Positions 9,466 through 29,369 of a stretch of 64,000 nt of DNA are shown one piece after another (position 1 is the stretch's first letter; the number at the start of each line of letters is the position of its first letter). The stretch spans positions 62,001 through 126,000 of IMG/VR virus record IMGVR_UViG_3300023181_000025, one strand, 5' to 3'. Below the pieces are notes generated by a model. It did not search any database. It saw only the letters and a list, made by a program, of their open reading frames with translations, and had not been told where the DNA came from. The position numbers were made by a program, and so were the translations under genes.

Positions 9466-9972
9466 ATGAACGAAACCGAAAAAACCTTACTGAAGCGTTA
9501 TCTAGAAACGGGGGTAATGGACGAGAGACTATTACTTATAAACAAAGGAATTCTTGACTTCATATACCAGAAGTATTTTCTTTCATTTTCTTTTATAAAA
9601 GACGATCTTATGCAAGAGGGCCTTCTTGGGCTTCTCGAAGCCTTTAATAGATTTGATGAAAGTCGCGAGGGAGGATTTTTTAATTATAAAAAGCTTTGGG
9701 TTAGAAAAAAGATGCAAGTTCTAGCTTATAAGCAAAGCAGGATTAATTCTTTCAGCGATCTAAAAATTTCAGAACCAATCTCATTTTGGGGAAGTTCTTG
9801 CTATAGATTAGAAAGAATTCAAAATGTTATTGACTTAGTTGAATCTTGCGATAAAATATCAATTCACGATAAAATTGAAATCGCCGAAGCCATAAAAGGT
9901 AATAGGCCCGGCTTCAAGAACAGCAAAACCTTTGCGAAGTTAAGAAAATTAGTAAGTTATGACAAAATTTAA
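9466..9972 (+). CDS. phage sigma factor (sigma70 region 2)
   Basis: DDLMQEGLLGLLEAFNRFD.SR...F..Y...WVR. Confidence 0.8.
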   Translation: MNETEKTLLKRYLETGVMDERLLLINKGILDFIYQKYFLSFSFIKDDLMQEGLLGLLEAFNRFDESREGGFFNYKKLWVRKKMQVLAYKQSRINSFSDLKISEPISFWGSSCYRLERIQNVIDLVESCDKISIHDKIEIAEAIKGNRPGFKNSKTFAKLRKLVSYDKI

Positions 9973-9984
9973 ATCATATTGGAA

Positions 9985-10548
9985 ATGGGAACAAGAATAA
10001 TTGGAATTTCAGGAAATGCACGGAGCGGCAAAGATTCTTTGGCAATCTGTATACAAAAAGACCTTCAAAAAGATGGATTAACTTCACGGATTATTAGTTT
10101 AGCCGCGCCACTTAAAGAAGTGGTAAAACCCTTTGTTTACGAAAACTTTGGCATAGATCTTGACAACTGCACAGACAATGAGAAATTACTACTAAGGCCC
10201 TTAATGGTCGCATTTGGACAAGCAAAGAGAAATTTCACACAAGGCCGATATTTTATTGATATTTTAGACGAAAAGATTCGTAATTCGAATTATGATTTTA
10301 TTATAGTTCCAGATATAAGATTCGCGGACTTCGGGTTTGACGAGTTAGATTGGTTAATGCAGAAAAGTGGAGTTCTTTGGTATGTTGAAAAAACTTTGGA
10401 AAATGGAGAAATCTTAGGTCCGCCCAATGAGGACGAGGCAAGAAATAACCCAATTTTGAAATCTAACGCTCATTTTAAATTAGTATGGCCCGACAAATTA
10501 TCTGAGGAAGAAAGATTTAATTTTTATATATATGGGAAAGCTAAATAA
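9985..10548 (+). CDS. deoxynucleoside monophosphate kinase
   Basis: IIGISGNARSGKD, LA.PLK, K...RPL, VPDIRF. Confidence 0.8.
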   Translation: MGTRIIGISGNARSGKDSLAICIQKDLQKDGLTSRIISLAAPLKEVVKPFVYENFGIDLDNCTDNEKLLLRPLMVAFGQAKRNFTQGRYFIDILDEKIRNSNYDFIIVPDIRFADFGFDELDWLMQKSGVLWYVEKTLENGEILGPPNEDEARNNPILKSNAHFKLVWPDKLSEEERFNFYIYGKAK

Positions 10549-11068
10549 CACAAAATCATATTTGGTTGGGGCCATCCAGTATGAAAATGGACAGGCTTGG
10601 AGATCTGATTTTACAGACAAGCTTAATTCCATAGGGGTGAGGGTTTTGAACCCATATAATAATATATTTGTAAATAGCCCGGCTGAAGATATCACAGCCC
10701 ATGAGGATTTATATAAGTTGATGGATAGCGGTCAATTTGATAAGGTTCGTCAACATATGAAATTAATACGGAATTTGGATTTATCAGCCGTTGATAGAAG
10801 TGATTTCATTGTGGCTTATATTAATCCAAAAGTTCCCACAATAGGCTCCATAGAAGAGTTAACAGTAGCTTCAGCAATTAAGCGCGCCACCTTTATCATT
10901 ATTGAAGGTGGAATAAAAAAATGCCCCTTTTGGCTTCTTGCGATGTTTCCAACAAAGTATTTTTATAATTCATTTGGGGAAGCTTGGGAAACTATTTCAA
11001 AAATTGATTCGGGGGAAATAGAAATTGATTCCGATAGATGGAGATTATTGGTCGAGCACTTGAGATGA
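10532..11068 (+). CDS. nucleoside 2-deoxyribosyltransferase-like protein
   Basis: YL.GAI, WR, V.NP, DL..VD.SD.IVA, TIGS.EEL. Confidence 0.7.
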   Translation: MGKLNNTKSYLVGAIQYENGQAWRSDFTDKLNSIGVRVLNPYNNIFVNSPAEDITAHEDLYKLMDSGQFDKVRQHMKLIRNLDLSAVDRSDFIVAYINPKVPTIGSIEELTVASAIKRATFIIIEGGIKKCPFWLLAMFPTKYFYNSFGEAWETISKIDSGEIEIDSDRWRLLVEHLR

Positions 11069-11116
11069 CCAAAAAATAGTGTAAATAATAAAGCAAAACA
11101 TAACAAAATAAAATAT

Positions 11117-11575
11117 ATGAAAATTGAATTCACGCAGGACTTCGAAGTAAAAGTCCAAAAAGATGGGGAAGAAACTAAAGTAAAAACTTTTGAAGGGGAT
11201 AAAAAATATTCCATCGAAAGCTTCAGAAATGCCGGTAATATTGTCGAGATTTCTTTTAAAGATGGATCTAGGATAAATAGATTGGCCGCTGGTTTAGTTA
11301 AAAGCGTCGAGCAATCGAAAGCTGAAATCAAGGAAGATCAAGAGTCCCAAGAAGAGCTAGATAAAATTAACAAAGAAATCGCGGACAGGGAGTTTGCAGA
11401 AATTAAGCAAAGAGAAGAAGATGAGGCCCGTGCTGTTAAAGAGCAAGAAGATGCTCTTCTGGCAGAACAAGAGAGAGAGGAACTGGCAGCAAAAATTGCC
11501 GAAGAAAATGCCAAAGAAGAGGAAAAAGAAGCCAAAAAGACAAAGAAAAAGTCAGACAAAGTCGATAAAGACTAA
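11117..11575 (+). CDS. hypothetical protein with charged coiled-coil tail
   Basis: E/K/A-rich C-terminus; preceded by AGTGTAA motif. Confidence 0.6.
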   Translation: MKIEFTQDFEVKVQKDGEETKVKTFEGDKKYSIESFRNAGNIVEISFKDGSRINRLAAGLVKSVEQSKAEIKEDQESQEELDKINKEIADREFAEIKQREEDEARAVKEQEDALLAEQEREELAAKIAEENAKEEEKEAKKTKKKSDKVDKD

Positions 11576-11864
11576 TTTCTCTCCCCTTCCATAAGAAATC
11601 GCGAAAGATTGAAATAATTTTAATATAATTAAATCCTTGGTTATAGCCGGACGATAAAGTTGGGTGTAATTAGAAGTTTCGCAATTTTTCAAAAAATCTA
11701 ATTGTTTTTTAAGGATTTCCCTTGCGGGAAATCTTTTTTTTGCGTATGCGAGCCATTCATCGAATTTATCTTCTTGACTTTTTATGGAAAATTGATAAAG
11801 TGCAATCCACGCAAGTAATTCTTCTGAGTTACAATTTGCTTCAAATATTTTCTCAACACTTTCC

Positions 11865-13370
11865 ATGACTAAAGATTTTTACGAACACAAGACAGTTACA
11901 CAAAAACAATTAGATTTTTGGTTCCTGAAGAGAAAAAACGTTCTTTTTATATCCGAGTTCGGGGTCGGGAAAACGACCATTGTAAAAAATTATTTTGAGA
12001 GCATGGGTCTAAACTATGCTATATTCAGCGGTGCCACACTGGACCCTTGGGTAGATCTAATTGGGATTCCAAAACTAGTTGAGAAAGAATTTTCGAGGAA
12101 AGACGAAAAAGGCAAAGAAATTAAATATATTGATAAAGTATTAGAATTTGCGCGTCCGCAGAATCTAAGTGAAGATATCGAAGCGATTTTCATTGATGAA
12201 TTTAATAGATCACACCCGAAAGTAAGAAATGCGGTAATGGAATTAATGCAGTTTAAAACAATTAATGGCAGAAAATTTCCCAACCTCAAGGTCATATGGG
12301 GCGCGATAAATCCAGACAACTCTGATAATTCTTATGATATTGATGTTGTGGACCCTGCACAATTAGATAGATTCCACGTTATTATTAATTTGGCTAATCA
12401 AATTAACGTAGAGGTTTTCACAAAAAAATATAATAAGGCAATTGCAGAGTCTTGTCACAATTGGTATAATAAATTAGACCAATCGTTTAAAAGCTTTGTT
12501 AGCCCGCGTCGTTTAGATTATGCTGTGGAGCACTATTTACAAGGTGGAGATATAAGAGAGATTTTACCGCATAAGGGTTTAAATATTGTGGATTTGGTAA
12601 AACAATGGCGCACAAGCAATGATTTTGACAAATTTAAAACTCTAATATCTGCGGGTGACGAGGATCAAATTAAAATATTTCTAGGTAATCAAGAGTCTTA
12701 TCAATCTGTGCTAAAGGATTGCTTAGGGAGTAACGAATATTGTAATATACTAATAAAATATGCCCTACCCGAACAAATATTGGCGCTTGCAGAAAGTGAA
12801 CCGAAAACGGCTAATTTAATTTACAAAGCCGCCCAAACAAGAAAGGATTTATACGAAAGCTTGAACGAACATAAGAAGGCATCGGGATCTTACCCCGATT
12901 GGTTTTCTAGTTCTTCTGGAGCGGTTTTAAATGCCAAGGTTTGTTTGGATTGTTTTGAAGAGCAGATCAATATTTATCCCCTTAATCTTGGATGGCAAAC
13001 GGAAGTAAATGATATAGCTGGGTTAGTTAATTCAAGGGCACTTTCGGAAATACTTGATGATATTAAATCTCCTTCCGAGGTTTCAATTGTTTCAATTAAT
13101 GAAGATTCGGCCATTAATTTTCTTCGTTTTTGTAAGAAATTTTCAGATGCTTTTGGAATTTCTAAAATATATGAAGATGATACCAACTCAAAGAAAATAG
13201 TATCTAATAAGTTTAAATCCCTTTATTATAGTTCTCTTTACACCTTTTATTTAAAGGATGCAAATTTCTTAGGAGTTGAGTATGAGGTTCCGGGAGTAAT
13301 AAAGCTTATCAATTCGTTTAGTGGCCCGAAAAAATTAGTTAAAGGCAAATTTCTTCAAGAAGATCTATGA
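11865..13370 (+). CDS. MoxR-like AAA+ ATPase
   Basis: FGVGKT, DL.GIP, IFIDEFNR, GAINP, DPAQLDRF, SPRR. Confidence 0.88.
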   Translation: MTKDFYEHKTVTQKQLDFWFLKRKNVLFISEFGVGKTTIVKNYFESMGLNYAIFSGATLDPWVDLIGIPKLVEKEFSRKDEKGKEIKYIDKVLEFARPQNLSEDIEAIFIDEFNRSHPKVRNAVMELMQFKTINGRKFPNLKVIWGAINPDNSDNSYDIDVVDPAQLDRFHVIINLANQINVEVFTKKYNKAIAESCHNWYNKLDQSFKSFVSPRRLDYAVEHYLQGGDIREILPHKGLNIVDLVKQWRTSNDFDKFKTLISAGDEDQIKIFLGNQESYQSVLKDCLGSNEYCNILIKYALPEQILALAESEPKTANLIYKAAQTRKDLYESLNEHKKASGSYPDWFSSSSGAVLNAKVCLDCFEEQINIYPLNLGWQTEVNDIAGLVNSRALSEILDDIKSPSEVSIVSINEDSAINFLRFCKKFSDAFGISKIYEDDTNSKKIVSNKFKSLYYSSLYTFYLKDANFLGVEYEVPGVIKLINSFSGPKKLVKGKFLQEDL

Positions 13371-14539
13371 CTGATTCTGAAAGAAATAAAAGATTCGATA
13401 TAATTAAGTATCAATTGATGGAGTTTTCTGAGTGTTTTTATGAACTTGGGAAAATAGGAGACCCTATTTGGGACGACTCAATTCCAACTGCCCAGATAGA
13501 GTTTACTCGCGATGGAAGGAGACTTGCATTTAGATGGAGCACAATTGATTTTGACAAGCATGATGACTATACAATTATGGCTACTTTATGCCATGAAATG
13601 TGTCATATTATTTTGCAACATGGCAAAAGAGGCTTGAAGCTCACAGACCATCGGAAGGCGAATATAATGATGGATGTATATGTAAATCATTTAATGGTTG
13701 ACGGGTTTGGAATGAACAGGTCATTGATTAATAACTGGAAAGACTGGTGTTGGCGCGATACCGTTTTTAATATAAATATAGAACATAAGCCATCTTTTGA
13801 ATATTATTATAATATTGAAGATGAGTTTATTGTTCCCGGCTTTAGCACCAGAGATGGCCATTCGTTTCTTATCGCGCCCGATTCTGAGATTAAAGATGCT
13901 ATAGAGGATGCCGCAACTGTGTTTTTTGATGCTCTCCCAAGCGGATACGGGGATGAGGCCAAAGAGATATGTTCCGATTTTGAAACAAAAAAATCAATTA
14001 AGAGAAAATTTGAACATCTAGTGAAGGGATTGGTTTCCTCAATAAAAGAAAAAGATGAATCGTTATTTGAATCTTGGGGGCAGTTAGACAGAAGGCTTTG
14101 CGATTTTACAACCGATATACCCGGATCAATAATTATAGATAGTCATATTGCTCCAAGAAAATATCGTTGTTATTTTTATGTAGATAATAGCGGATCGTGT
14201 GCTAATTGGGCAAAGAAATTTTGTAATGTTTCCGCATCCCTTGATGAAAAGTTATTTGAGGTGAAGCTTTTTAGTTTCGATACCAAAGTGTATGAAGTTG
14301 AAAAACAAAATAATTTATACCGTCTATATGGTGGAGGAGGAACGAGCTTTGAGGTGGTTGTAAATCATTTGCAATCGCAAGAAGAAAAAGCGGACATTGT
14401 AATTGTTTTGACCGATGGTTTTGGCGAACAGGTTTTTCCAAAGAATAAGAAAATTTGGAATTGGTTATTAACAGAATGCGGGACAGCCAGCTCTCTAGAT
14501 AGGGCTGGCAATATTTATAGATTATCTCAGTATGAATAA
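13367..14539 (+). CDS. metallopeptidase-vWA protein (DUF2201-like), AAA partner
   Basis: HEMCH zinc motif; MIDAS DNSGS, GGGTSF, TDG. Confidence 0.85.
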   Translation: MTDSERNKRFDIIKYQLMEFSECFYELGKIGDPIWDDSIPTAQIEFTRDGRRLAFRWSTIDFDKHDDYTIMATLCHEMCHIILQHGKRGLKLTDHRKANIMMDVYVNHLMVDGFGMNRSLINNWKDWCWRDTVFNINIEHKPSFEYYYNIEDEFIVPGFSTRDGHSFLIAPDSEIKDAIEDAATVFFDALPSGYGDEAKEICSDFETKKSIKRKFEHLVKGLVSSIKEKDESLFESWGQLDRRLCDFTTDIPGSIIIDSHIAPRKYRCYFYVDNSGSCANWAKKFCNVSASLDEKLFEVKLFSFDTKVYEVEKQNNLYRLYGGGGTSFEVVVNHLQSQEEKADIVIVLTDGFGEQVFPKNKKIWNWLLTECGTASSLDRAGNIYRLSQYE

Positions 14540-15230
14540 AATAAATGCTATATATTTTTCCTGTGAGAGGGATGCGGATATGCTAGAGAACTCAATCGAC
14601 TCGTTGCGATTAAATTATCCAATTAATAGGATCATTGTTGCAAACGATTTAAACGATCCAATCTTAAGAAAAATTCCCGGAGTGGAAATTATAAATAAAA
14701 AGAAATCTAGCGAAAAACTCTATGGACTTGAAAATATTGGTGAGATGCTTTCTTTTTTTAAATTCGCATCGAATGATTGCGATTATATACAAAAGATTGA
14801 CAGCGATACATTGGTTTGCTCAGATTTAGCTTATAGAAATCTGGAAGAGGGAAAGTGGGACGCATACGGGTCTTTTCCTATGGCAATTCCCGAAATGATC
14901 CCCCCAAGGCATTTCGCGGGACCGTCCTATTTTCTTAGGTCTTCTTTAGCGGCGAAATTATTTGACTTTGGATTCCCAAAAACGGTTCATGATTGGGCTT
15001 GGATGAAATACCCCGAGGACATGGTAATAAGTGATATTTGCAATCATCTCACTCAAAACATTCAAGTTGATGGAACCGCCATGCATAAGGCCGGAAAGTA
15101 TTTATTCGATACATACTTGACAAAAATAGCGGGTTGTGATAAAAGTGAAATTACAAAATACGGATTTGCTCATTGTCGGACTAACCCCTATGTTTTGCGG
15201 TATATTAAGGAAAAGATTTATGTAAAATAA
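14532..15230 (+). CDS. putative GT-A glycosyltransferase
   Basis: KIDSD DxD motif, G..YFL, PED. Confidence 0.55.
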   Translation: MNKINAIYFSCERDADMLENSIDSLRLNYPINRIIVANDLNDPILRKIPGVEIINKKKSSEKLYGLENIGEMLSFFKFASNDCDYIQKIDSDTLVCSDLAYRNLEEGKWDAYGSFPMAIPEMIPPRHFAGPSYFLRSSLAAKLFDFGFPKTVHDWAWMKYPEDMVISDICNHLTQNIQVDGTAMHKAGKYLFDTYLTKIAGCDKSEITKYGFAHCRTNPYVLRYIKEKIYVK

Positions 15231-15687
15231 TAACTTTTGCTATTGAATATGGAGGATTAGTTTGTATTTAGCTTAGAGAAAAATTAAAATATGAAAACAA
15301 AAAAACTGGAATTATCAAATGAAGAAGCAAAGCTACTAAATAATATTTTAGTAGAACATTGTATGAGTGTGGTAGAATTGCTAAATACGTGTAAAACAAA
15401 ACAAGATCACGACAACACGTTGAAGATTATTCAGTCGTCTGTCTTTTCTCAGCAAACTCTTTTCGCCCAAGTGGTTTCTAGAGAATATGAATTTGGAGAG
15501 GGATTTTTAGATTTTCTAAATGCCATTATAGAAGCGGCTATTGAATATCTTAAGGAAATCAAGGAAAAAACAAATGATATTCTTCAAAACGTCACATTGA
15601 GCACAAACATTGATTTGCTTGAGGGCATCATAAAAAAAATTCCAGAAAAGAGCTTGATTATTACCTGATCACAGATATCATATTTTT

Positions 15688-16188
15688 ATGAGCACTTTTA
15701 AAAATAGACAAAATAAATGTTTCGATACGGTTTGTGGCCAAAAAATTTGGAAGTCTCGAAATGTAGCGGTTGCGACTTGTATCTTGCGCCCAAAGCCCCA
15801 AGAAGACTCAAAATTACAAATTCTTGCCATCGAAAGAGGCCCCGCCGTAACCGACACAGGTAAATTTTGTTTTCCCTGTGGGTATCTAGATTGGGATGAA
15901 ACCGTTGAACAAGGGGCGCTTAGAGAAGTTTTTGAAGAATCCAACATTTCACTTTCCGAAGAAGATTTAGAGTTTCAATATGTAAACAGTGACCCAAATT
16001 CCGAACTTCAGAATGTTACCATGCATTTTATTGCATACGCTCTTGACGGGGAAGAAATCTCTGGCAAGAATGCAGAAGAAGGTGAGATTACCAGTGTTAG
16101 GTGGGTTGATATCGAAAATATCAAAGATTATATTTGGGCTTTTAATCATGATAAAATTGCACTAAATTACTTACGCCATGTCCTTTGA
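15688..16188 (+). CDS. Nudix hydrolase
   Basis: GYLDWDETVEQGALREVFEESNI Nudix box. Confidence 0.92.
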   Translation: MSTFKNRQNKCFDTVCGQKIWKSRNVAVATCILRPKPQEDSKLQILAIERGPAVTDTGKFCFPCGYLDWDETVEQGALREVFEESNISLSEEDLEFQYVNSDPNSELQNVTMHFIAYALDGEEISGKNAEEGEITSVRWVDIENIKDYIWAFNHDKIALNYLRHVL

Positions 16189-16371
16189 TATAAAAATTAT
16201 TAATTACTTAGAAAGGCTCGCGGGTTTGAAGGCTAAAATAAATACGCGTTATTATGGTTCAGTAGAAGCTATTACTGAAAAAGGCGAAAAAGTTATTGTC
16301 CCAGATAATAATTTTGAATATTTGTCAGAAAGTAATTCCCATAGTAATAATACTGGTGTAAAATAAAAAGT

Positions 16372-16487
16372 ATGAGCGTATGTAATTCCAAATTTACCCA
16401 TAAGACAGGAGCGAGTAATCGTTATCTGGGGTAAGATTTGTATTTATATACTTCTCTTTTAAACCCCACTTTAAAGTGGGTTTTTTT
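16372..16487 (+). promoter_or_regulatory. attenuator-like unit: 20-aa leader ORF (16372-16434) + intrinsic terminator
   Basis: MSVCNSKFTHKTGASNRYLG*; CCCACT-ttaa-AGTGGG-T7; leader end TGGGGT complements ACCCCA in terminator arm. Confidence 0.5.
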
Positions 16488-16559
16488 GTTCTTTGACATT
16501 AAATATTTTATTTATCTTGACAGATAGAGTGTATTATCATACACTCATGCCAAGATTAA

Positions 16560-16631
16560 CTTGACTTAGCTGAGATGGATTAGCATGAATTTGAAACATT
16601 CACTAGGGAGGATCGTTACCTCCAGTCAAGG
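16560..16631 (+). tRNA. tRNA-Phe(GAA)
   Basis: acceptor CTTGACT/AGTCAAG, loop TTGAAAC. Confidence 0.85.
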
Positions 16632-16638
16632 CTTAAAT

Positions 16639-16711
16639 TGCGTATTGGTAGATTGGTTTCATACAGGAATCTGCAAAATTTCAGAAATGGGTTCGATTCC
16701 CATATACGCAT
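16639..16711 (+). tRNA. tRNA-Cys(GCA)
   Basis: TGCGTAT/ATACGCA, loop CTGCAAA, TTCGATT. Confidence 0.9.
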
Positions 16712-17056
16712 CTTATGATTGAGGAATGGAAAAGAGTCTTAACCAAGGTAACTGTTTTTCCATTGGCAACAATTGATTCAGTATTTTTTATCTTAAAAGA
16801 TTCTCAAAAAACTATTGACTTTATTACTACTTGTAGTAAAACAGGGGTGCAACCAATAAAAACATTGGTAAGCCTTAAAAACTTATTAAAATATGAATAT
16901 CGAAGACGCATTGAAAGTTTTATTGACTCCGGACGGTAAAGGGGCCAAAAGAAAAGCAGTGATCTTATCAGAACTTTGTGTTACAGCAAATGCTAATTTA
17001 GTTCGTGATATCATTGAAAAAATGTTGAAGAATAAGAAATTAGTGTAAATATATCT

Positions 17057-17128
17057 GGGTTGATAGCTTAATCGGTAAAGCCTTCGATTGTGAATCGAAC
17101 CTCGGGAGATCGTAGCTCCCTCAACCCT
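17057..17128 (+). tRNA. tRNA-His(GTG)
   Basis: GGGTTGA/TCAACCC, TTCGA-TTGTGAA-TCGAA; no encoded G-1. Confidence 0.85.
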
Positions 17129-17133
17129 CAGCA

Positions 17134-17736
17134 ATGTTTTACGATTTTATAGAAGCAGGATTATATCAGTTTGAGTCGCTGTCAAAAAGGGGCGACCTGC
17201 AAAAGGGTATTGTTATTGAACCGATAACTGATATTATAAACAAAACAGAAGTAGGAAAATATGTTTTCAAAGAGAACTCTGCAATTGACGGAGAAAGCCG
17301 CATAGATCATAGATTTTATGTTGACGATGAATTGAGAATAAAATATGATCTCCCTTCTTGGATTTGTAGTTTGTCGTCTTTTACTCAAGTTCATCCTCTG
17401 GTTGAAAAAGAATTTAATCAAAGGGGCATTTTTCTTTCGGAGATTAAATTGAGGCAAGTGGATGTTGTTACTTGGGAAATTATATTTCAAAAATACAATG
17501 TTGTTGGAGTAAATGTATTGAAATTAAATAGTTTTAAAAGAGATTGTAAGATTCTTGAATTATTTCTTGACCAAGCAGAAAAGACAGCCATAGTTCTTCC
17601 GGAGAAGATAATTTATCATACTCTTTACGAAAAGGATATTAATTACGTCGAAAGCTCATACAAGAGACTAAAGGAACTAGGTTATAAGATAGAAATAATA
17701 GGGATAGAAACGATCGCAACCAAAAATGAAAATTAA
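17134..17736 (+). CDS. FkbM-like methyltransferase (divergent)
   Basis: YDFIE.G, GIVIEP, V..LK.....DC.IL. Confidence 0.5.
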   Translation: MFYDFIEAGLYQFESLSKRGDLQKGIVIEPITDIINKTEVGKYVFKENSAIDGESRIDHRFYVDDELRIKYDLPSWICSLSSFTQVHPLVEKEFNQRGIFLSEIKLRQVDVVTWEIIFQKYNVVGVNVLKLNSFKRDCKILELFLDQAEKTAIVLPEKIIYHTLYEKDINYVESSYKRLKELGYKIEIIGIETIATKNEN

Positions 17737-18412
17737 ATACTATACAGTAGGTGGGGCGATAAGGGACGAACTACTTGGAGTTAAAAGTAAAGATATTGAT
17801 TTTGCAGTAGAGGCTTCAAGCTATGAAGCGATGAGAGAGGATCTAATTTCCAAAGGTATTGAGATTTTTCAGGAGCGTCCCGATTTTTTTGCAATTAGAG
17901 GAAAGCATCCGAAATTGGGCGCGGTTGATTATACATTGTGTAGAAAAGAAGGATTTTATTCTGATGGACGTAGACCAGACAGTGTTACGATCTGTTCAAT
18001 TGAAGAAGAGCTTTCCAGAAGGGACTTTTCGATCAACTCGATGGCCAAAAATGAAGAAGGAATTTTAATTGACCCATTTGATGGGGCGCGGGATTTAGAA
18101 AATAATCTTTTGAGATGTGTTGGTAGTTCTTACGAAAGATTTTCCGAAGATTCCCTTCGATTAATTAGAGCTATTCGATTTTTCATAACCAGAGGGTTTC
18201 GCCTTCATGAGGACATATGTTATTGTTTGAGAGATGAATTTCTTTTGGAAAAAATTAAAAATATTTCAATTGAAAGAATCTATGAAGAGTTGACAAAGTG
18301 TTTCGCTTATGATAGCTTTGCGACACTTCAGTTTTTCAGAGAATATCGTAAGTTGGAAAAGGTTGTTTTTGAAGACATCGGATTAAAATTGACACCAAAA
18401 ATAATCAAGTAG
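17726..18412 (+). CDS. cca: tRNA nucleotidyltransferase (class II CCA-adding, short form)
   Basis: VGGAIRD.LLG...KDIDF, RRDFSINSMA, DPFDG..DL, EDSLRLIRAIRF, ERIYEEL. Confidence 0.9.
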   Translation: MKIKYYTVGGAIRDELLGVKSKDIDFAVEASSYEAMREDLISKGIEIFQERPDFFAIRGKHPKLGAVDYTLCRKEGFYSDGRRPDSVTICSIEEELSRRDFSINSMAKNEEGILIDPFDGARDLENNLLRCVGSSYERFSEDSLRLIRAIRFFITRGFRLHEDICYCLRDEFLLEKIKNISIERIYEELTKCFAYDSFATLQFFREYRKLEKVVFEDIGLKLTPKIIK

Positions 18413-18417
18413 AATAT

Positions 18418-18489
18418 GCCTTCCTAGCTCAAGTTAGAGCAAGCCCCCGAGGGGGCATAAGGTTTGTGGTTCATGTCCACGGGGAGGCG
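18418..18489 (+). ncRNA. tRNA-like RNA with tetraloop instead of anticodon loop
   Basis: GCCTTCC/GGGAGGC, D-arm GCTC/GAGC, T-arm; GCCCC-CGAG-GGGGC. Confidence 0.7.
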
Positions 18490-18521
18490 CAGAAAATATA
18501 TAAAAATATTATTTTATATAT

Positions 18522-18592
18522 GCCTCAATAATTCAATGGTAGAATTCTAGCTTTGTAATCTAGGAACGAGGGTTCGATTCCCTCTTGAGGCT
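18522..18592 (+). tRNA. tRNA-Thr(TGT)
   Basis: GCCTCAA/TTGAGGC, loop TTTGTAA. Confidence 0.88.
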
Positions 18593-18858
18593 CTTAACTC
18601 TTTAAATATCAACATATTACAACATGATTACATTTTTCCAATTAACATTTGCAGGAATTATTATAATGATGCTGTTTGATATTTTTTGGTTATCAGAATA
18701 TATTTTCAATAAGTCATTTCATAGAGTGGTTTACAATCGTATTTTAAAATTTAATGATAAAGGTTTCTTTGGCCGTTCCCATTCTATTGCATTGTGGACA
18801 TATATTTTGTGCCCGCCGATTTGGATCGCGGCATATTTATTAAATACATATTAAGTTA

Positions 18859-19461
18859 ATGAAAAACATTGCCGTCATAATGACCATGGAAGGCTATAGC
18901 CTTGTCAATTCAGAAGTATTTACTGAAAATAATCCTAATACCCCTGTTTACTATTTGTATGGGGACGCATCCAAAGAAAAAGGCAAAAGAAATATTGATA
19001 GGCTCGTAAAGAAGTGGTGGGAATCCGAAGGTAAAGAATTAGATTTTGAATACGCCTTATTTATGGAATGGGATGTATTGTTTGATGAGAAAATTGAAAA
19101 TATATTTTCAGAAGATTCCGATTTTGAAGTAAAAACTTTAATACAGGATGGGAGTGGCTGGATTGGATTCCGAGACAGAAGAAAAATTTTATCAGAATTT
19201 AAAACTTTAGTAGGAGTTGGCCCGCTTTGTTTGTTTAGAATTAGCCGAAAATGCTTAGAAGTTATTTTTAATCGAAAAAATATTGATGCTTTGTATGCTA
19301 AAGATATGGCGGCGGGCCTTAGATTTGGTTCACTCATTAATAGTTTTAGTTTTCAAATAAAAGAATTGGATAATATTAAAGGTGTTGATTGGGGTGGCGA
19401 AAATAAAGTCGTAAAAGGCAAGGGTGTTTGGCACCCAGTAAAAAATGTAGATTTTAGTTGA
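18859..19461 (+). CDS. putative glycosyltransferase-like protein
   Basis: EWDV motif, C-terminal WHPVK. Confidence 0.4.
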   Translation: MKNIAVIMTMEGYSLVNSEVFTENNPNTPVYYLYGDASKEKGKRNIDRLVKKWWESEGKELDFEYALFMEWDVLFDEKIENIFSEDSDFEVKTLIQDGSGWIGFRDRRKILSEFKTLVGVGPLCLFRISRKCLEVIFNRKNIDALYAKDMAAGLRFGSLINSFSFQIKELDNIKGVDWGGENKVVKGKGVWHPVKNVDFS

Positions 19462-19490
19462 CAATAATCTAAAAATAGTGTAAATTTCAT

Positions 19491-19564
19491 TGCGGGTTAG
19501 ACTGGAGGTGGTTCCAGCCAAGTTTCATAAGCTTAGGAGATCAGTTCGATTCTGATACCCGCAA
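19491..19564 (+). tRNA. tRNA-Met(CAT)
   Basis: TGCGGGT/ACCCGCA, loop TTCATAA. Confidence 0.85.
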
Positions 19565-19637
19565 CTCAAAAACAATTAAAAAGCTAATTGACTGTTAGTA
19601 AATGTATTGTTCTCTTTCGCTAGTCACTAAAGAGTTT

Positions 19638-19708
19638 CGCGCATTCGTCTAATGGTAAGATGCCTCAAAAACATGGGGTGAAAGGTGATTCGATTTCATC
19701 GTGCGCAA
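19638..19708 (+). ncRNA. tRNA-like RNA, 6-nt A-rich loop without U33
   Basis: GCGCAT/GTGCGC, D-arm with TGGTA, TTCGATT; CCTCA-AAAACA-TGGGG. Confidence 0.65.
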
Positions 19709-19714
19709 CATAAT

Positions 19715-19804
19715 TCCCATCGGGCTGGCTAGAGAAGGCTCTCGACTGTTAATCGAGTGGCACCGAATTAAGTAGGTGGCTAGGGGCGGAACCTAGGATG
19801 GGAG
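19715..19804 (+). tRNA. tRNA-Asn(GTT) with long variable arm
   Basis: TCCCATC/GATGGGA, CTCGA-CTGTTAA-TCGAG, atypical T-loop. Confidence 0.75.
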
Positions 19805-19854
19805 CAAATATTTCTTGACTTATCCAATAAATCAGGTAATATACAAAAAGATTA

Positions 19855-19932
19855 GCGGGAATAGCTCAATGTAGAGCGCGACTTGGTTTTAAAAATCCCG
19901 TCGAGGCAGCGGTTCAAACCCGTTTTCCCGCA
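19855..19932 (+). ncRNA. tRNA-like RNA with enlarged anticodon arm
   Basis: GCGGGAA/TTCCCGC, normal D/T arms, CGAC-17 nt-GTCG. Confidence 0.7.
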
Positions 19933-19936
19933 CAAA

Positions 19937-20014
19937 AACTCGGTCGTCTAATAAAAATTAGGGCACCACTCATCGGTAGTGGAAATAAAGGTGAAAGGCC
20001 TTTCCGGGTTGCCA
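19937..20014 (+). tRNA. atypical tRNA-Arg(TCG)-like, CCA encoded
   Basis: AACTCGG/CCGGGTT-G-CCA; CCACT-CATCGGT-AGTGG (A33). Confidence 0.6.
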
Positions 20015-20040
20015 TTTATAATGAATTTATTCATTGTGAC

Positions 20041-20150
20041 GCTGAATGACGGTTCTATTAGATATATTAAAAATAAATTGGCGCTCTGGCCTCTTCGTTT
20101 GCTTACTCATAAAGTATATCTTATACCAGATTCAATATCTGGGTTCAGCA
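20041..20150 (+). ncRNA. tRNA-like RNA with large insert in anticodon arm
   Basis: GCTGAAT/GTTCAGC, T-arm CCAGA-TTCAATA-TCTGG, AGATATA/TATATCT enclosing ~45 nt. Confidence 0.55.
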
Positions 20151-20164
20151 CATTGTAATATAAT

Positions 20165-20236
20165 GGGGGTAGAGCTTGTTAGGAGAAGCACTCGGCTTTT
20201 AACCGATAGAACTGGGTTCGAATCCCAGTGCCCCTA
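20165..20236 (+). tRNA. tRNA-Lys(TTT)
   Basis: loop CTTTTAA, GGTTCGAATCCC. Confidence 0.88.
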
Positions 20237-20251
20237 CATTTAATATTAATA

Positions 20252-20330
20252 GCGAGTATCACATAGAGGTCGATTGTGCCTAACTTCCAATTAGGAATAC
20301 CACGCGTGAGTTCGAATCTCACTACTCGCA
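20252..20330 (+). tRNA. tRNA-Gly(TCC)
   Basis: GCGAGTA/TACTCGC, CCTAA-CTTCCAA-TTAGG. Confidence 0.88.
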
Positions 20331-20549
20331 CATATTTATAATGAAAGAGCCAAATATTATAGTAAGATTGATTCTTTGTTTAATTTCTCCTATAAAATGG
20401 AGAGAAAGGCTGGTTTTAGGCAAGTGTTTTGTTATATTATATAGAGAAAGTAGAAACGATAGTTTGGCCTTCGAGCTAAAAGACAGAATAAATGAGTTGT
20501 GGGAAAAAGAATACGAAAAATGGTGGAAGTTTAAAGCGAAATATTTTTA

Positions 20550-20661
20550 GCCTTCGAAGCAGACGGTTCGATTCCGTCGCCTAGAGATAGGTCCATGGAT
20601 GGTATAAAGCTTACGGTGACATGGTTTGACTCCATATCGGGTTCAATTCCCGACGAAGGCT
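20550..20661 (+). ncRNA. tRNA-like RNA with two T-arm hairpins
   Basis: GCCTTCG/CGAAGGC; GACGG-TTCGATT-CCGTC at D position and TCGGG-TTCAATT-CCCGA at T position. Confidence 0.65.
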
Positions 20662-20669
20662 CAGTAATA

Positions 20670-20761
20670 GGGTAACTAACTCAAGCGGTCTTGAGACTCG
20701 CCTTGAAAGCGATGAGTTCCAGTAAACATTCTGGAATGGGGATCGACACCTCAGTTGCCCG
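20670..20761 (+). tRNA. tRNA-Ser(TGA)
   Basis: loop CTTGAAA, long variable arm, G73. Confidence 0.88.
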
Positions 20762-20862
20762 CTTTTGTGGTTAGGCATTTGTTTCATATTGGTTTGAGGG
20801 TAGTCCCTCCGCAGTCGAAAGCGTTATCATGCCACCTCGCCAATTTATTGGCGAGGGTGAAT

Positions 20863-20947
20863 GGGTTGTAAATCGGACAGGCGTGCCGAGCTTTGTTGCT
20901 AACAAAAGGGACCGGAAACGGTTGGATTTCGAATATTCTGCAACCCG
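20863..20947 (+). tRNA. tRNA-Ser(GCT)
   Basis: loop TTGCTAA, long variable arm ACCG-GAAA-CGGT. Confidence 0.82.
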
Positions 20948-21006
20948 CACGGAAATTTATAAATAAGATTTCCAAAAATTGTCACAGATAAATAAAATAT
21001 TAATTA

Positions 21007-21080
21007 GGGGTCTTAGCTCAATTGGTAGAGCAGTGCGTTTGCAACGCGAAGGTTGTAGGGTTCGAGTCCCTCAGATTCCA
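21007..21080 (+). tRNA. tRNA-Ala(TGC)
   Basis: GGGGTCT start, G3:U70, loop TTTGCAA. Confidence 0.92.
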
Positions 21081-21083
21081 CAT

Positions 21084-21168
21084 GGAGTATTATGTAAACT
21101 GGTGTTTACGGTTGCTTGGAAAGCAACAGGCCGTTAGTTCGGCAAGGGTTCAATTCCTTAATGCTCCG
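21084..21168 (+). tRNA. tRNA-Ser(GGA)
   Basis: GTTGC-TTGGAAA-GCAAC, long variable arm. Confidence 0.88.
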
Positions 21169-21341
21169 CAGAACTAATATTATGAAAACAACTCATCAAT
21201 TCGCCCTCAAGTTAAACGGAAAAAAGCCGGGCCGATAAAATGATTGAATATTTAGATTACTTAATTAAGAGTCAGACAAAAATACCCGTTTCCAATCAAT
21301 GTTTCGCGGTAATAGTTTTTGATAGCATTAAAAATAAATAT

Positions 21342-22118
21342 TTATTTGATTTCCGCTTTTCTAGTGTCTAAACCCTGTTGAAATAGCCTTGATTCAGCCT
21401 CTCGTCTTAACCATAGGCCTTTTAGCTTTTCTCTTGACCACAGCCTTCTCATGCTCAATATGTCACTAGGAACATTTTCCACTTTATCATTAGCGATATT
21501 ATACTTAATCCATCTCATTTCTTTTCGCGAATCCGTATTAGCTAGCGATGGGCCTCGATTAAAAACTAGCGAGGTTAAAGCTCCGTTAGAATGCGGATGC
21601 AATGTTGTGGGGGCAAGAGAGAACGCATCTTTTGTTTGCTTGGTGAAAACCGGCATGGTATAATTAGTAAATACTTTTTCGGCTTGATTGTAATCAAACC
21701 TTAATAAATTTCTAACCTTTGGAAGGCCATTATAATATGCGTTTTTCCCGGTCATTCCAGACACAGACTGCATCAATTGTATTTCTTTTTCTGTTGCTAC
21801 GCCTGTAAAAGCTTTACGTATTTGATCTTTAGTCATCATCCCTAAGTCATTCCCAATGCATACAGTTACTCCCGATGAGGTTGTTTGCCAAGCAGGAACC
21901 GTTGGTCTGGTTAGATACTTGTCATAGTATTCTCTAGTTCCAGATTCATAATAAATTATCAAATCAACGCTTTTTTGAGAAACTGGGAGCGATAAACCTT
22001 CGCTAATAACGTCATTAGGGCCAGCAAATGCCAGCCCCATAAACGCTACTAATAATAGTAATGTTTTTTTAATTAATTTCAAAGTATCCCACATTTTCCA
22101 TTTTGAATTTAGAAGCAC
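21342..22118 (-). CDS. lysozyme-fold endolysin with signal peptide (true start probably ~22071-22094)
   Basis: LIIYYESG, SGVT..IG.DLG, AL.SLVFNRG, GL..RREAE..LF; KKTLLLLVAFMGLAFA. Confidence 0.8.
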   Translation of the reverse strand: MLLNSKWKMWDTLKLIKKTLLLLVAFMGLAFAGPNDVISEGLSLPVSQKSVDLIIYYESGTREYYDKYLTRPTVPAWQTTSSGVTVCIGNDLGMMTKDQIRKAFTGVATEKEIQLMQSVSGMTGKNAYYNGLPKVRNLLRFDYNQAEKVFTNYTMPVFTKQTKDAFSLAPTTLHPHSNGALTSLVFNRGPSLANTDSRKEMRWIKYNIANDKVENVPSDILSMRRLWSREKLKGLWLRREAESRLFQQGLDTRKAEIK

Positions 22119-23007
22119 TATAGTTATTTTTTGTTTTTAGAAGTATTTTCAAACCCTTTCTTTCCCAATACCTTAAATAATTAGAAAGCGTGGAATTTTC
22201 AGGATAATTGCCAAATTTTGCCTTTATAAAAGATTTAACGTTTATTATATAATATAATTTGTTTTCATAGTTTACAACATACCTAGGTCCATATTTGCAT
22301 TTTAACTTTTTTATAGAATTTATTCTTTTTTGCTTTGATTCTTCAGTATGATTTCTGCCATAAAATGGATTATTTTTACCTTCATAAATCCCAAGCTTTT
22401 TTTCGCGCATTATTATTTTGTCTTTTTTTGTATGTTTATAGCCCTTTGCCGGAGGAGTCACTTCCCCGGATTTAATTTTTTCTACATATTTAATTAGACT
22501 TTGTCGGCTTTTTTCTTTTGATTCTGGAGTTATTTTAGATAAATTATTTATGCTGGTCGCTATAGCCTTTTTACTGTTTTCACCGGTGTAAAAAGCTTTG
22601 AGTTTAAGTGATATTTTTTCTTTTGTAGAGACGCTTCTATGCTTTTCGAATAACTTAAAATCAGTTGGATCATTAAGAATATTGAAACCAAAATCTGGGA
22701 AAGAAGATTGGTAGAAATCTATCCAAAATTTTTCCATTTTAAGTAGATTCTCATATGTATAATTTTTTGCCCATTCTAATATTTCGATTATAAATTCTTC
22801 ATGTCCGAATTTATTCCAATAGTTTTGAAGATGTGCGTTGCCATGTAACTTTTTATTTAGTTGCTGAATATGCTCTTTTAACCTCCTAGATACATTAACT
22901 GAACTTCCTATATAAATTTTACCCGTAGGTATATGAGTTATTGAATAAATAGCCTTTTCATTTTTGTTGTATAACCCATAGCTTTTTATTAATTCTGTAG
23001 CTGTCAT
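22069..23007 (-). CDS. GIY-YIG homing endonuclease with NUMOD3-like repeats
   Basis: AIYSI....GKIYIGSS...RRL.EH; GYKHT, NPFYGRNHTEESK. Confidence 0.9.
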   Translation of the reverse strand: MTATELIKSYGLYNKNEKAIYSITHIPTGKIYIGSSVNVSRRLKEHIQQLNKKLHGNAHLQNYWNKFGHEEFIIEILEWAKNYTYENLLKMEKFWIDFYQSSFPDFGFNILNDPTDFKLFEKHRSVSTKEKISLKLKAFYTGENSKKAIATSINNLSKITPESKEKSRQSLIKYVEKIKSGEVTPPAKGYKHTKKDKIIMREKKLGIYEGKNNPFYGRNHTEESKQKRINSIKKLKCKYGPRYVVNYENKLYYIINVKSFIKAKFGNYPENSTLSNYLRYWERKGLKILLKTKNNYSASKFKMENVGYFEIN

Positions 23008-23411: not shown

Positions 23412-23471
23412 AGTAAATTTATTTACACTAAAAATCTTGACATACTAGAAAAAGTTGATATATTCTTGCCC

Positions 23472-23831: not shown

Positions 23832-23874
23832 TTACTGGAAACTTTAAAATTTTAGTGTAATATTAGCATACTAT

Positions 23875-29060: not shown

Positions 29061-29114
29061 AAATGCGGAGATTTATTTCTTCCCAAATACAAAAAATTGT
29101 GTAATAATACAAAC

Positions 29115-29244
29115 ATGAACTTAAGACAGTTACAACCGATTATTCTTCGCGAGTGGTATCCACTCGTTAAGGCGGTAATGTAAATATTTTTAGTTTAATT
29201 AAAATTTATATTAACCGCTTTTCTGTAAAGATTAGCGGTTTTTT
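29115..29244 (+). promoter_or_regulatory. attenuator-like unit: 22-aa leader ORF (29115-29183) + intrinsic terminator
   Basis: MNLRQLQPIILREWYPLVKAVM*; AACCGCT...AGCGGTT-TTTT; leader AAGGCGGTAA complements TTAACCGCTT. Confidence 0.55.
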
Positions 29245-29369
29245 GTTGGGTTTTTACAAGTTGCACCCGAAGCAATAAGCAGTCGCGGGAATGCGAGTTT
29301 GGTTCTAAAAGGGAACGGAAGGTTAAAGAAAATTATTGATAGGTTTAATACCCTGTCAATAAACATAAT

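What the first reader, a model, noticed from the sequence alone, without database searches (positions are those of the whole stretch)
16355..16487. Second, sequence-unrelated attenuator-like unit at the start of the tRNA island
Seen: same architecture as 29098-29244: GGTGTAA, a 20-codon diverse leader, and terminator CCCACT/AGTGGG-T7, with leader end TGGGGT complementary to ACCCCA of the terminator arm. Two independent copies, both heading tRNA blocks, argue against chance. Caveat: TTGACA boxes just downstream (about 16493 and 16517) could transcribe the tRNAs independently.
Basis: partly seen in the sequence, partly recalled or inferred. Interest (0 to 1): 0.65.

Follow-up and report, generated by a model that had tools for sequence, protein, structure and literature searches.

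The report
Attenuator-like switch before phage tRNA genes
In front of the first tRNA genes of an uncultivated 211-kb leaf-litter phage lies a small module (promoter-like motif, 20-codon reading frame inside a long RNA hairpin, alternative pairing, terminator) that looks like a ribosome-sensing transcription attenuator; if it works that way, it would be the first such switch known to gate tRNA genes, but only computer evidence exists.

Summary
Two readings need correcting. GGTGTAA is not a ribosome-binding site. This genome has no Shine-Dalgarno signal, and GTGTAA is the core of an intergenic promoter-like motif (wwwTA-GTGTAA-ATA). That motif sits 8-12 nt before the ATG of real genes and 7-14 nt before three tRNAs.

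The mini-ORF (16372-16434) therefore starts about 0-3 nt from a predicted transcription start. It lies wholly inside a strong hairpin (16374-16454, -25 kcal/mol, z -4.2). The hairpin's 3' arm can instead pair with the terminator's 5' arm (-9.8 kcal/mol; shuffle p 0.002-0.018).

With a modelled ribosome stalled at codons 4-10, the terminator is lost. With no ribosome, or one at the stop codon, the terminator forms. The sequence-unrelated unit at 29080-29246 repeats every element, and no usable promoter lies between it and tRNA-Trp.

Best reading (confidence about 0.45): a ribosome-mediated attenuator gating read-through into tRNA genes. Rivals are a tiny autonomous gene or small RNA with a constitutive terminator, and a plain terminator. 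The phage has no relatives and no RNA data, so function is untested. It meets the thresholds of no Rfam leader family and has no codon runs.

The parts
16336..16364 (+). Promoter-like element of unit 1: TTCCCA (16336-16341), then GTGTAA core (16356-16361) with TAAAAT (16359-16364). The predicted start of transcription is about 0-3 nt before the ATG at 16372. It lies in the 3' end of the 62-aa ORF 16178-16366.
   Evidence: One search lists TTCCCA-N17-TAAAAT. Searches show GTGTAA as the core of an intergenic motif wwwTA-GTGTAA-ATA (TAGTGTA: 9 of 12 copies intergenic). One search shows GTGTAA-N(8-12)-ATG before real genes of 55-609 codons. Unit 1 deviates from the consensus just upstream (TG instead of TA), so it may be a weak copy.
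16372..16434 (+). Mini-ORF of 20 codons plus TAA (MSVCNSKFTHKTGASNRYLG). It contains single Cys (codon 4), Phe (codon 8) and His (codon 10) codons in the 5' arm of the hairpin.
   Evidence: The start context scores at the median of real gene starts and at the 94.5th percentile of other ATGs. Translation itself is not shown.
16374..16454 (+). Long hairpin (regions 1:2) enclosing the whole mini-ORF, including the UG of the AUG and the stop codon.
   Evidence: -25.1 kcal/mol, z -4.22, with 1 of 200 shuffles as good. Searches show it as part of the minimum-energy fold of the full unit.
16427..16468 (+). Alternative (antiterminator, 2:3) structure. UGGGGUAAGA (16427-16436) pairs with UCUU (16455-16458) and ACCCCA (16463-16468) around a small inner hairpin. 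It removes four bases of the terminator's 5' arm.
   Evidence: It is the minimum-energy fold whenever codons 4-10 are masked by a ribosome. Pairing gains -9.8 kcal/mol, with shuffle p 0.002-0.018.
16465..16487 (+). Intrinsic terminator (3:4): CCCACT-TTAA-AGTGGG followed by T7. It lies 30 nt after the mini-ORF stop and 98 nt after the stop of the last longer ORF.
   Evidence: (-7.6 kcal/mol). The same 22-mer serves as a plain gene-end terminator in 11 unrelated viral contigs.
16517..16545 (+). Independent promoter for the tRNA block: TTGACA-N17-TACACT, overlapping a GTG-TATTAT element at 16529-16537. The upstream TTGACA at 16493 has no -10 partner.
   Evidence: TTGACA is three-fold enriched in intergenic DNA (49 of 140 copies in 12% of the genome).
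16560..16712 (+). tRNA-Phe(GAA) at 16560-16632 and tRNA-Cys(GCA) at 16639-16712, the first genes of the tRNA island and the putative regulated genes.
29080..29108 (+). Companion unit 2, promoter-like element: TTCCCA (29080-29085), GTGTAA (29099-29104), TGT-AATAAT.
   Evidence: (extended -10 flagged).
29115..29183 (+). Companion unit 2, mini-ORF of 22 codons plus TAA (MNLRQLQPIILREWYPLVKAVM). It has one Trp codon (14) and two Pro codons (8, 16).
   Evidence: The start context is at the 79th percentile of real starts.
29116..29197 (+). Companion unit 2, long hairpin (1:2) enclosing the mini-ORF.
   Evidence: -26.6 kcal/mol, z -4.62, with 0 of 200 shuffles as good.
29169..29221 (+). Companion unit 2, antiterminator. 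AAGGCGGUAAUGUAAAU pairs with AUUUAUAUUAACCGCUU and takes up the terminator's 5' arm.
   Evidence: the most structured GC-corrected 85-nt window of the whole + strand; pairing gains -10.5 kcal/mol, p 0.0025-0.024. At equilibrium the terminator conformation is still slightly favoured.
29214..29246 (+). Companion unit 2, intrinsic terminator ACCGCTTTTCTGTAAAGATTAGCGGT plus T-run, 31 nt after the mini-ORF stop. tRNA-Trp follows at 29370 with no usable promoter in between.
   Evidence: (-10.8 kcal/mol).

Best explanation
Unit 1 (16336-16487), like its companion at 29080-29246, is most likely a ribosome-mediated transcription attenuator placed before tRNA genes.

Proposed mechanism:

- Transcripts enter the unit from the upstream operon (9466-16366) or from the unit's own GTGTAA-type promoter. 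That promoter would start the RNA 0-3 nt before the AUG.
- If no ribosome is on the RNA, the long hairpin (16374-16454) forms, buries the AUG, and leaves the terminator (16465-16487) free to form. Transcription stops, giving an RNA of about 115-125 nt.
- If a ribosome runs through to the stop codon (16432-16434), it covers UGGGGUAAGA. The terminator again forms.
- If a ribosome is held up within codons 4-10 (the 5' arm, which carries the single Cys, Phe and His codons), the 3' arm is free. It pairs with ACCCCA of the terminator arm. RNA polymerase then reads on into tRNA-Phe and tRNA-Cys.

The switch would thus raise phage tRNA synthesis when translation is slowed by lack of charged tRNA.

What is shown: every sequence element, the energies, and their statistical rarity. 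What is inferred: translation of the mini-ORF, the transcription start, termination efficiency, and any response to tRNA supply.
For: - The canonical parts are present in two units unrelated in sequence apart from a shared promoter-like motif.
- Both hairpins are strongly non-random: z -4.2 and -4.6, ranking 47th and 1st of 14,073 windows.
- Both have an antiterminator worth -9.8 and -10.5 kcal/mol. This is about equal to or more than the terminators themselves (-7.6 and -10.8). Shuffle p is 0.002-0.024.
- Ribosome-mask folding of unit 1 gives the textbook truth table. The terminator forms with no ribosome or with a ribosome at the stop codon, and the antiterminator forms with a ribosome at codons 4, 8 or 10.
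- In both units the stop codon lies inside the antiterminator's 5' arm.
- Mini-ORF start contexts score like those of real genes. GTGTAA-N10-ATG is the spacing used by real genes of 55-609 codons.
- Gene-end terminators in this genome lie 18-42 nt after a stop codon. These two lie 98 and 154 nt after the last longer ORF.
- No usable promoter lies between the unit 2 terminator and tRNA-Trp, so that tRNA must be made by read-through.
- Among the sub-threshold Rfam resemblances are leader-type attenuators. Unit 1 hits Phe_leader at 24.0 bits and L10_leader at 19.6; unit 2's only hit is L10_leader at 22.2.
- Each leader holds codons for the tRNAs that follow it and not for those of the other unit: Cys, Phe and His against Trp and Pro. 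By my own arithmetic this has a chance of about 0.01-0.001. It is a post hoc observation.
Against: - There is no run or cluster of regulatory codons, which is the defining sensor of classical leader attenuators. Conditioned on the leaders' diverse composition, the match of codons to downstream tRNAs is not significant (about 0.13 by my arithmetic).
- tRNA-Phe and tRNA-Cys have a good promoter of their own 30 nt after the terminator, so read-through adds little there.
- In unit 2 the terminator conformation stays the equilibrium minimum in every ribosome state. The argument there needs co-transcriptional kinetics.
- Unit 1's promoter motif deviates from the consensus.
- The terminator stem is short (6 bp).
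- The stop-to-terminator distance of the mini-ORFs (30 and 31 nt) is exactly that of ordinary genes, which fits a plain tiny gene equally well.
- There is no RNA evidence, no sequence variation in other samples, and no relatives for covariation.
- No comparable unit was seen in two other phage tRNA islands.
Confidence: 0.45

Rival explanations
1. The unit is an autonomous tiny gene. A GTGTAA-type promoter drives a nearly leaderless 20-codon (22-codon in unit 2) peptide gene, or a structured small RNA of about 120 nt, ended by an ordinary constitutive terminator. It sits next to tRNA genes simply because the tRNA island is a mosaic of small transcription units. The hairpin stabilises the RNA or is the functional part of a small RNA.
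For: - The promoter-to-ATG spacing is identical to that of real genes.
- The stop-to-terminator distance of 30-31 nt falls within the 18-42 nt of ordinary genes.
- The start contexts are gene-like.
- The layout (5' hairpin, AU-rich linker, terminator hairpin, U-tail) is that of many bacterial small RNAs. Sub-threshold Rfam hits to sRNA terminator ends (sroH and others) appear.
- A separate promoter follows unit 1.
- From my own knowledge, the tRNA regions of T4 and T5 also hold small ORFs and stable RNAs of unknown function.
Against: - It does not explain why both units carry a statistically unusual pairing between the hairpin's 3' arm and the terminator's 5' arm.
- It does not explain why the stop codon sits inside that arm in both units.
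- It does not explain why tRNA-Trp has no promoter after the unit 2 terminator.
- A hairpin that buries the AUG is odd for a gene meant to be translated efficiently.
Confidence: 0.3
2. The unit is a plain operon-end terminator followed by a promoter. The terminator merely ends the 9466-16366 operon, the hairpin is a 3'-end protecting or processing structure, and the mini-ORF and the 6-bp complementarity are chance.
For: - A 20-codon ATG ORF in about 100 nt of this composition is not rare (about 0.3-0.4 by my arithmetic).
- The same 22-nt terminator is a plain gene-end terminator in 11 unrelated phage contigs.
- The terminator-then-promoter order is standard.
Against: - Two units share five independent features. 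These are the motif, the ATG at N10, the ORF inside the hairpin, the alternative pairing and the terminator.
- Clean terminators elsewhere in the genome follow their gene within 18-42 nt, without such hairpins.
- The hairpins and alternative pairings are significant against shuffles.
Confidence: 0.15
3. The unit is a factor-dependent switch. The hairpin is bound by a protein (for example a ribosomal protein, as in the L10 leader, or a phage RNA-binding protein). Alternatively, RNA polymerase is modified by a phage antitermination factor. Either way, read-through into the tRNAs would be set by that factor or by infection stage, not by a translating ribosome.
For: - Both units give their full-length sub-threshold Rfam match to L10_leader (19.6 and 22.2 bits).
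- The two promoter classes (TTGACA type and GTGTAA type) suggest a temporal programme.
Against: - Scores are far below the gathering score of 44.
- The alignment shown rests on the A/U-rich stretch and the terminator.
- No shared hairpin sequence exists that one protein could recognise.
- No candidate factor was identified.
Confidence: 0.1

Closest known systems
Leader-peptide (ribosome-mediated) transcription attenuators of amino-acid operons: trpL, pheL (Rfam RF01859), hisL, thrL, leuL
   Same: A short ORF directly after the promoter. An anti-antiterminator (1:2), antiterminator (2:3) and intrinsic terminator (3:4) that exclude one another. The stop codon is placed so that a terminating ribosome blocks the antiterminator. 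Default termination without translation. Unit 1 aligns end to end with the Phe_leader model.
   Different: No run of regulatory codons. The genes behind it are tRNAs, not biosynthetic enzymes. The leader is nearly leaderless in a genome without Shine-Dalgarno sites. It is phage-borne. Scores are far below Rfam thresholds (24 against 55; Trp_leader 14 against 41). Unit 1 has a second promoter after the terminator.
pheM-pheST attenuator of E. coli (leader peptide controlling phenylalanyl-tRNA synthetase; cited from my own knowledge)
   Same: A leader-peptide attenuator that regulates a component of the translation apparatus according to the supply of a charged tRNA.
   Different: It has a Phe-rich leader, and the target is a synthetase, not a tRNA gene. 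It is bacterial, not viral.
L10 leader (Rfam RF00557), attenuation by L10(L12)4 in Bacillus subtilis (PMC4538822)
   Same: Leader with anti-antiterminator, antiterminator and terminator. It is the only Rfam family that both units match over its full length.
   Different: It is protein-mediated and needs no leader peptide. Scores of 19.6 and 22.2 are against a threshold of 44. The protein-binding kink-turn was not examined, and the aligned parts are mostly the terminator.
Attenuator-derived small RNA and peptide, rnTrpL / peTrpL of Sinorhizobium meliloti (PMC7968998, PMC7298713)
   Same: A terminated leader transcript of about 110 nt and its leader peptide that persist and act in trans. This shows that the attenuator and small-gene readings need not exclude each other.
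   Different: No sequence relation, and no evidence here for any trans target.
T-box riboswitches
   Same: Transcription attenuation that senses tRNA charging.
   Different: There the RNA senses uncharged tRNA directly, with a leader of about 200-300 nt, a specifier loop and a T-box sequence. There is no match here, and the units are too short.

Membership tests
Leader-peptide transcription attenuator (trp/phe/his type) | Short ORF in the leader that is translated | tested here: inconclusive
   ORFs of 20 and 22 codons are present. Start contexts and promoter spacing are like those of real genes. Translation itself cannot be tested, because no RNA or ribosome data exist.
Leader-peptide transcription attenuator (trp/phe/his type) | Run or cluster of regulatory codons cognate to the regulated function | tested here: not met
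   Leader 1 has single Cys, Phe and His codons. Leader 2 has one Trp and two separated Pro codons. There are no tandem codons.
Leader-peptide transcription attenuator (trp/phe/his type) | Mutually exclusive 1:2, 2:3 and 3:4 structures with ribosome-dependent choice | tested here: met
   Met in silico only. Unit 1 shows it at equilibrium. Unit 2 shows it only with kinetic (co-transcriptional) reasoning.
Leader-peptide transcription attenuator (trp/phe/his type) | Intrinsic terminator between the leader and the regulated genes, which depend on read-through | tested here: inconclusive
   A terminator is present in both units. Unit 2 has no usable promoter before tRNA-Trp. Unit 1 has TTGACA-N17-TACACT before tRNA-Phe.
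Rfam Phe_leader RF01859 / Trp_leader RF00513 | Covariance-model score at or above the gathering score | tested here: not met
   Phe_leader scores 24.0 bits against 55. Trp_leader scores 14.1 bits against 41.
Rfam L10_leader RF00557 | Covariance-model score at or above the gathering score (44) | tested here: not met
   Scores are 19.6 bits for unit 1 and 22.2 bits for unit 2.
T-box riboswitch | Match to the T-box model, with specifier and T-box sequence | tested here: not met
   No T-box match at E up to 10.
Intrinsic (Rho-independent) terminator | G+C-rich stem-loop directly followed by a U-tract | tested here: met
   A 6-bp stem with 4 G-C pairs, a 4-nt loop and T7. Termination efficiency was not testable.
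   Only 20 of 147 long ORFs have GGAG, GAGG or AGGA upstream, and G is depleted at -1 to -25. GTGTAA also precedes tRNAs.

The most novel reading that the evidence does not exclude
A phage regulates its own tRNA genes by leader-peptide attenuation. A nearly leaderless 20-22-codon ORF of mixed codons acts as a sensor of how fast host ribosomes can decode. When charged tRNAs run short, ribosome stalling opens the terminator and boosts synthesis of the phage tRNAs just downstream (Phe and Cys after unit 1; Trp after unit 2). Shortage could arise from codon-usage mismatch, host shut-off or tRNA-targeting defence. This would be a feedback loop on tRNA genes themselves, which to my knowledge has not been described in phages or bacteria.
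Probability: 0.35. Interest if true: 0.8.

Novelty: new variant of a known kind. Interest (0 to 1): 0.6.

Why it matters
Phage tRNA genes are thought to compensate for codon-usage mismatch and for host defences that deplete tRNAs. How their expression is controlled is almost unknown.

A ribosome-sensing attenuator in front of tRNA genes would give a direct feedback from decoding speed to tRNA supply. It would extend a textbook mechanism in three ways: to a new class of target, to a leaderless and Shine-Dalgarno-free setting, and to leaders without codon runs.

The hypothesis is directly testable with two short synthetic constructs. The analysis also defines a promoter-like motif (TAGTGTAAATA) and a nearly leaderless gene organisation for a deeply novel 211-kb phage lineage.

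Tried and rejected
Searches that led nowhere:

- DNA similarity to known phages, near and distant: no match.
- Related loci in IMG/VR by the NUDIX protein and the CCA enzyme: none.
- The 200-aa downstream neighbour is an orphan among 5.8 billion proteins.
- The CCA enzyme has many relatives at 63% identity or less. Their contexts (L002-L007) are not syntenic and lack the motif or comparable units.
- Sequencing runs: only three leaf-litter DNA runs and no RNA. The other two samples carry identical sequence over the unit, so there is no variation to exploit.
- Exact-pattern scans: the tRNA-Phe 20-mer is found only in the phage's own contig.
- The terminator 22-mer is found in 11 unrelated contigs, where it is a plain gene-end terminator. 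This is convergence, not homology.

Ideas rejected:

- Shine-Dalgarno reading of GGTGTAA.
- A repeated or mobile element such as a MITE: both units are single-copy.
- A known RNA family: nothing reaches a gathering score.
- A link to TAG recoding by the suppressor tRNA: no sign of recoding.

Other results:

- My first control over other terminators used a flawed statistic for cases with no arm pairing, and I do not rely on it.
- PHROG scans of large genes behind GTGTAA motifs gave nothing, so the temporal class of that promoter type is unknown.
- Host inference through the TnpB gene gave only short, probably mis-binned MAG contigs.
- The correspondence between leader codons and downstream tRNAs gives p about 0.001-0.01 or about 0.13, depending on what is conditioned on. 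I treat it as suggestive only.

Full report
**Setting.** The window is bases 62001-126000 of a 211,168-bp IMG/VR virus record with 37.5% G+C. It was assembled from a leaf-litter metagenome and appears in three such samples with identical sequence. It has no DNA match among 50,697 deposited phages. Its proteins are remote from known ones. A + strand gene cluster (9466-16366) runs into the finding. It includes an AAA ATPase, a VWA/metallopeptidase protein, a NUDIX hydrolase at 15688-16188, and a 62-aa ORF at 16178-16366 that overlaps the NUDIX stop. From 16560 to 36342 there are at least 20 tRNA genes, interspersed with small ORFs, a CCA-adding enzyme and an insertion element.

**The observation.** These are GGTGTAA at 16355-16361, a 20-codon ATG ORF at 16372-16434, the terminator CCCACT-TTAA-AGTGGG-T7 at 16465-16487, TGGGGT (16427-16432) complementary to ACCCCA (16463-16468), and TTGACA at 16493 and 16517. 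Only the second TTGACA has a -10 partner, TACACT at 17 nt.

**What GGTGTAA is.**

- The genome shows no Shine-Dalgarno signal. Only 20 of 147 long ORFs have GGAG, GAGG or AGGA upstream, and positions -1 to -25 are A-rich and G-poor.
- GTGTAA is the core of an intergenic motif, roughly wwwTA-GTGTAA-ATA. TAGTGTA is intergenic in 9 of 12 copies, although intergenic DNA is only 12% of the genome.
- The motif lies 8-12 nt before the ATG of real genes of 609, 490, 174, 135, 105, 86 and 55 codons. The count is 9 of 22 intergenic copies, against 6 of 59 copies inside coding DNA.
- It also lies 7, 8 and 14 nt before tRNA-Met, tRNA-His and tRNA-Val. At tRNA-Met it sits at the correct distance from a TTGACA box.
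- A signal that precedes tRNAs cannot be a translation signal. I read it as the -10 region of a promoter class. This is an inference, since there is no transcript mapping.
- Both units have GTGTAA-N10-ATG, preceded by TTCCCA. The predicted RNA would therefore start 0-3 nt before the AUG. Nearly leaderless messages seem to be normal for this phage.
- The mini-ORF start contexts score like real starts. Unit 1 is at the median, and unit 2 at the 79th percentile.

**RNA structure.**

- The whole mini-ORF of unit 1 lies in a hairpin at 16374-16454, of -25.1 kcal/mol and z -4.2. In unit 2 the hairpin is at 29116-29197, of -26.6 kcal/mol and z -4.6.
- After correction for G+C, these regions rank about 47th and 1st of 14,073 windows on the + strand.
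- In each unit the hairpin's 3' arm can instead pair with the 5' arm of the terminator. In unit 1, 16427-16436 pairs with 16455-16468 and gains -9.8 kcal/mol. In unit 2, 29169-29185 pairs with 29205-29221 and gains -10.5 kcal/mol.
- Between 0.2% and 2.4% of dinucleotide shuffles reach these values. The terminators themselves are worth -7.6 and -10.8 kcal/mol.
- I folded unit 1 with a 30-nt ribosome footprint. The terminator forms when no ribosome is present or when one stands at the stop codon. The antiterminator forms, and the terminator is lost, when the ribosome stands at codon 4, 8 or 10.
- In unit 2 the terminator conformation remains slightly more stable at equilibrium. The antiterminator is complete before the terminator's 3' arm is transcribed, so the case there rests on kinetics.
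- In both units the stop codon lies inside the antiterminator's 5' arm. That is the geometry of the trp-type attenuators.

**Context.**

- Clean gene-end terminators in this genome follow a stop codon by 18-42 nt. The two unit terminators lie 98 and 154 nt after the last longer ORF, but 30 and 31 nt after the mini-ORF stops.
- After unit 1 there is a good promoter, TTGACA-N17-TACACT, with an overlapping GTG-TATTAT, 15-30 nt before tRNA-Phe.
- After unit 2 I find no usable promoter in the 125 nt before tRNA-Trp, so that tRNA must be made by read-through.
- Leader 1 contains Cys, Phe and His codons, and the next tRNAs are Phe, Cys and His. Leader 2 contains Trp and Pro codons, and the next tRNAs are Trp and Pro. 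Neither leader has the other's codons.
- By my own arithmetic, this has a chance of about 0.001-0.01 if one conditions on codon frequencies. It is about 0.13 if one conditions on the leaders' diverse composition. It is a post hoc observation, so I call it suggestive only.

**Comparison with known families.**

- Nothing reaches an Rfam gathering score.
- Below threshold, unit 1 aligns end to end with Phe_leader (24.0 bits against 55, E 0.04 in a 201-nt search) and with L10_leader (19.6 against 44). Unit 2's only match is L10_leader (22.2). Unit 1's best sub-threshold hits (sroH 28.4 bits, RefA9 25.5) cover only the terminator hairpin.
- The full-length matches are to attenuator leaders, which fits the shared shape of a long hairpin plus a terminator. 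They do not show membership.
- The defining sensor of classical leaders, a run of regulatory codons, is absent.
- No T-box match was found.
- Two literature searches found no report of leader-peptide attenuation of phage tRNA genes. The library is incomplete, so this is weak evidence of novelty.

**Verdict.** The best-supported reading is a ribosome-mediated attenuator gating read-through into tRNA genes, at about 0.45.

- The main rival, at about 0.30, is an autonomous tiny gene or small RNA with a constitutive terminator. Promoter spacing and stop-to-terminator distance fit it equally well. It does not explain the alternative pairings or the promoterless tRNA-Trp.
- A plain terminator with chance features stands at about 0.15.
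- A factor-dependent switch stands at about 0.10.
- The first two readings may both hold, as in the Sinorhizobium trpL attenuator, whose terminated RNA and peptide act in trans (PMC7968998, PMC7298713).

**Limits.**

- There are no RNA runs and no sequence variants.
- There are no relatives close enough for covariation. The downstream neighbour is an orphan, the best CCA enzyme relative is 63% identical, and its contexts are not syntenic. The tRNA-Phe 20-mer occurs only in the phage's own contig.
- The 22-nt terminator recurs in 11 unrelated viral contigs as a plain gene-end terminator, which is convergence.
- All statements about function are therefore inference from sequence and folding.

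Noticed in passing
Whole genome. In the window, for example 7299(-), 11079, 17043, 19478, 23428(-), 23855, 26846(-), 28876, 30176, 34517: Intergenic motif wwwTA-GTGTAA-ATA (about 18 good copies) lies 8-12 nt before the ATG of many real genes and 7-14 nt before three tRNAs. Together with the absence of Shine-Dalgarno sites, this suggests a promoter class that produces nearly leaderless mRNAs. TTGACA boxes form a second, sometimes combined, class.
   Followed up: partly
window 30355-32908: IS607-type insertion element inside the tRNA island. It comprises a MerR-HTH serine recombinase (210 aa), an N6/N4 DNA methylase (235 aa) and a TnpB (412 aa; OrfB_IS605 plus Cas12f1-like TNB domains). The TnpB is 88-89% identical to short MAG contigs labelled Lishizhenia, Woesearchaeota and Marmoricola, which are probably mis-binned.
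   Followed up: partly
window 29899-29973: tRNA with anticodon CTA (amber suppressor; ARAGORN calls it 'Pyl'), with its own TTGACG promoter. There is no sign of TAG recoding: TAG ends only 7 of 166 long ORFs, and frame coverage is about the same under code 11.
   Followed up: partly
window 18418-18489: G+C-rich 72-nt cloverleaf-like structure just before tRNA-Thr. It has an 8-bp acceptor-like stem, D-like and T-like arms, and a 4-nt 'anticodon' loop. The 116-nt stretch 18410-18525 that contains it folds at -40 kcal/mol (z -3.45). It was not called as a tRNA by ARAGORN or Rfam, and may be a tRNA-like RNA or a tRNA pseudogene.
   Followed up: partly
window about 29640-29677, 34140-34200, 34930-34960: Stretches with T-arm-like sequences (for example GGTTCAAATCC, GAGTTCGAATCTCAGG) that no tool called as tRNAs. 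They may be degenerate or unusual tRNA genes. Rfam also finds two tRNAs that ARAGORN misses (19855-19932, and 21083-21168 scored as tRNA-Sec-like).
   Followed up: no
window 29359-29332, minus strand: One of the three best sigma-70-type matches in an 18-kb scan (TTGACA-N16-AATAAT, 11 of 12). It lies on the minus strand between unit 2 and tRNA-Trp and points back into unit 2. An antisense transcript across the unit is possible.
   Followed up: no
genome 3-134 and the last 132 nt (outside the window): 132-bp direct terminal repeat (99.2% identical), although the record is classed as 'linear'. This is consistent with a complete genome.
   Followed up: partly
window 34517-34572: A GTGTAA motif followed by a 27-nt A/U-rich hairpin (TTGAAACAATAAAATTTATTGTTTCAA) directly before tRNA-Arg(ACG). 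This is another structured leader in front of a tRNA, without a U-tract.
   Followed up: no
window 24028-24055: Hairpin AAAAGCCACTAATTACTTGGTGGCTTTT lies between convergent genes (after tRNA-Val on the + strand, and at the end of the 715-aa gene on the minus strand). It looks like a two-way terminator.
   Followed up: no
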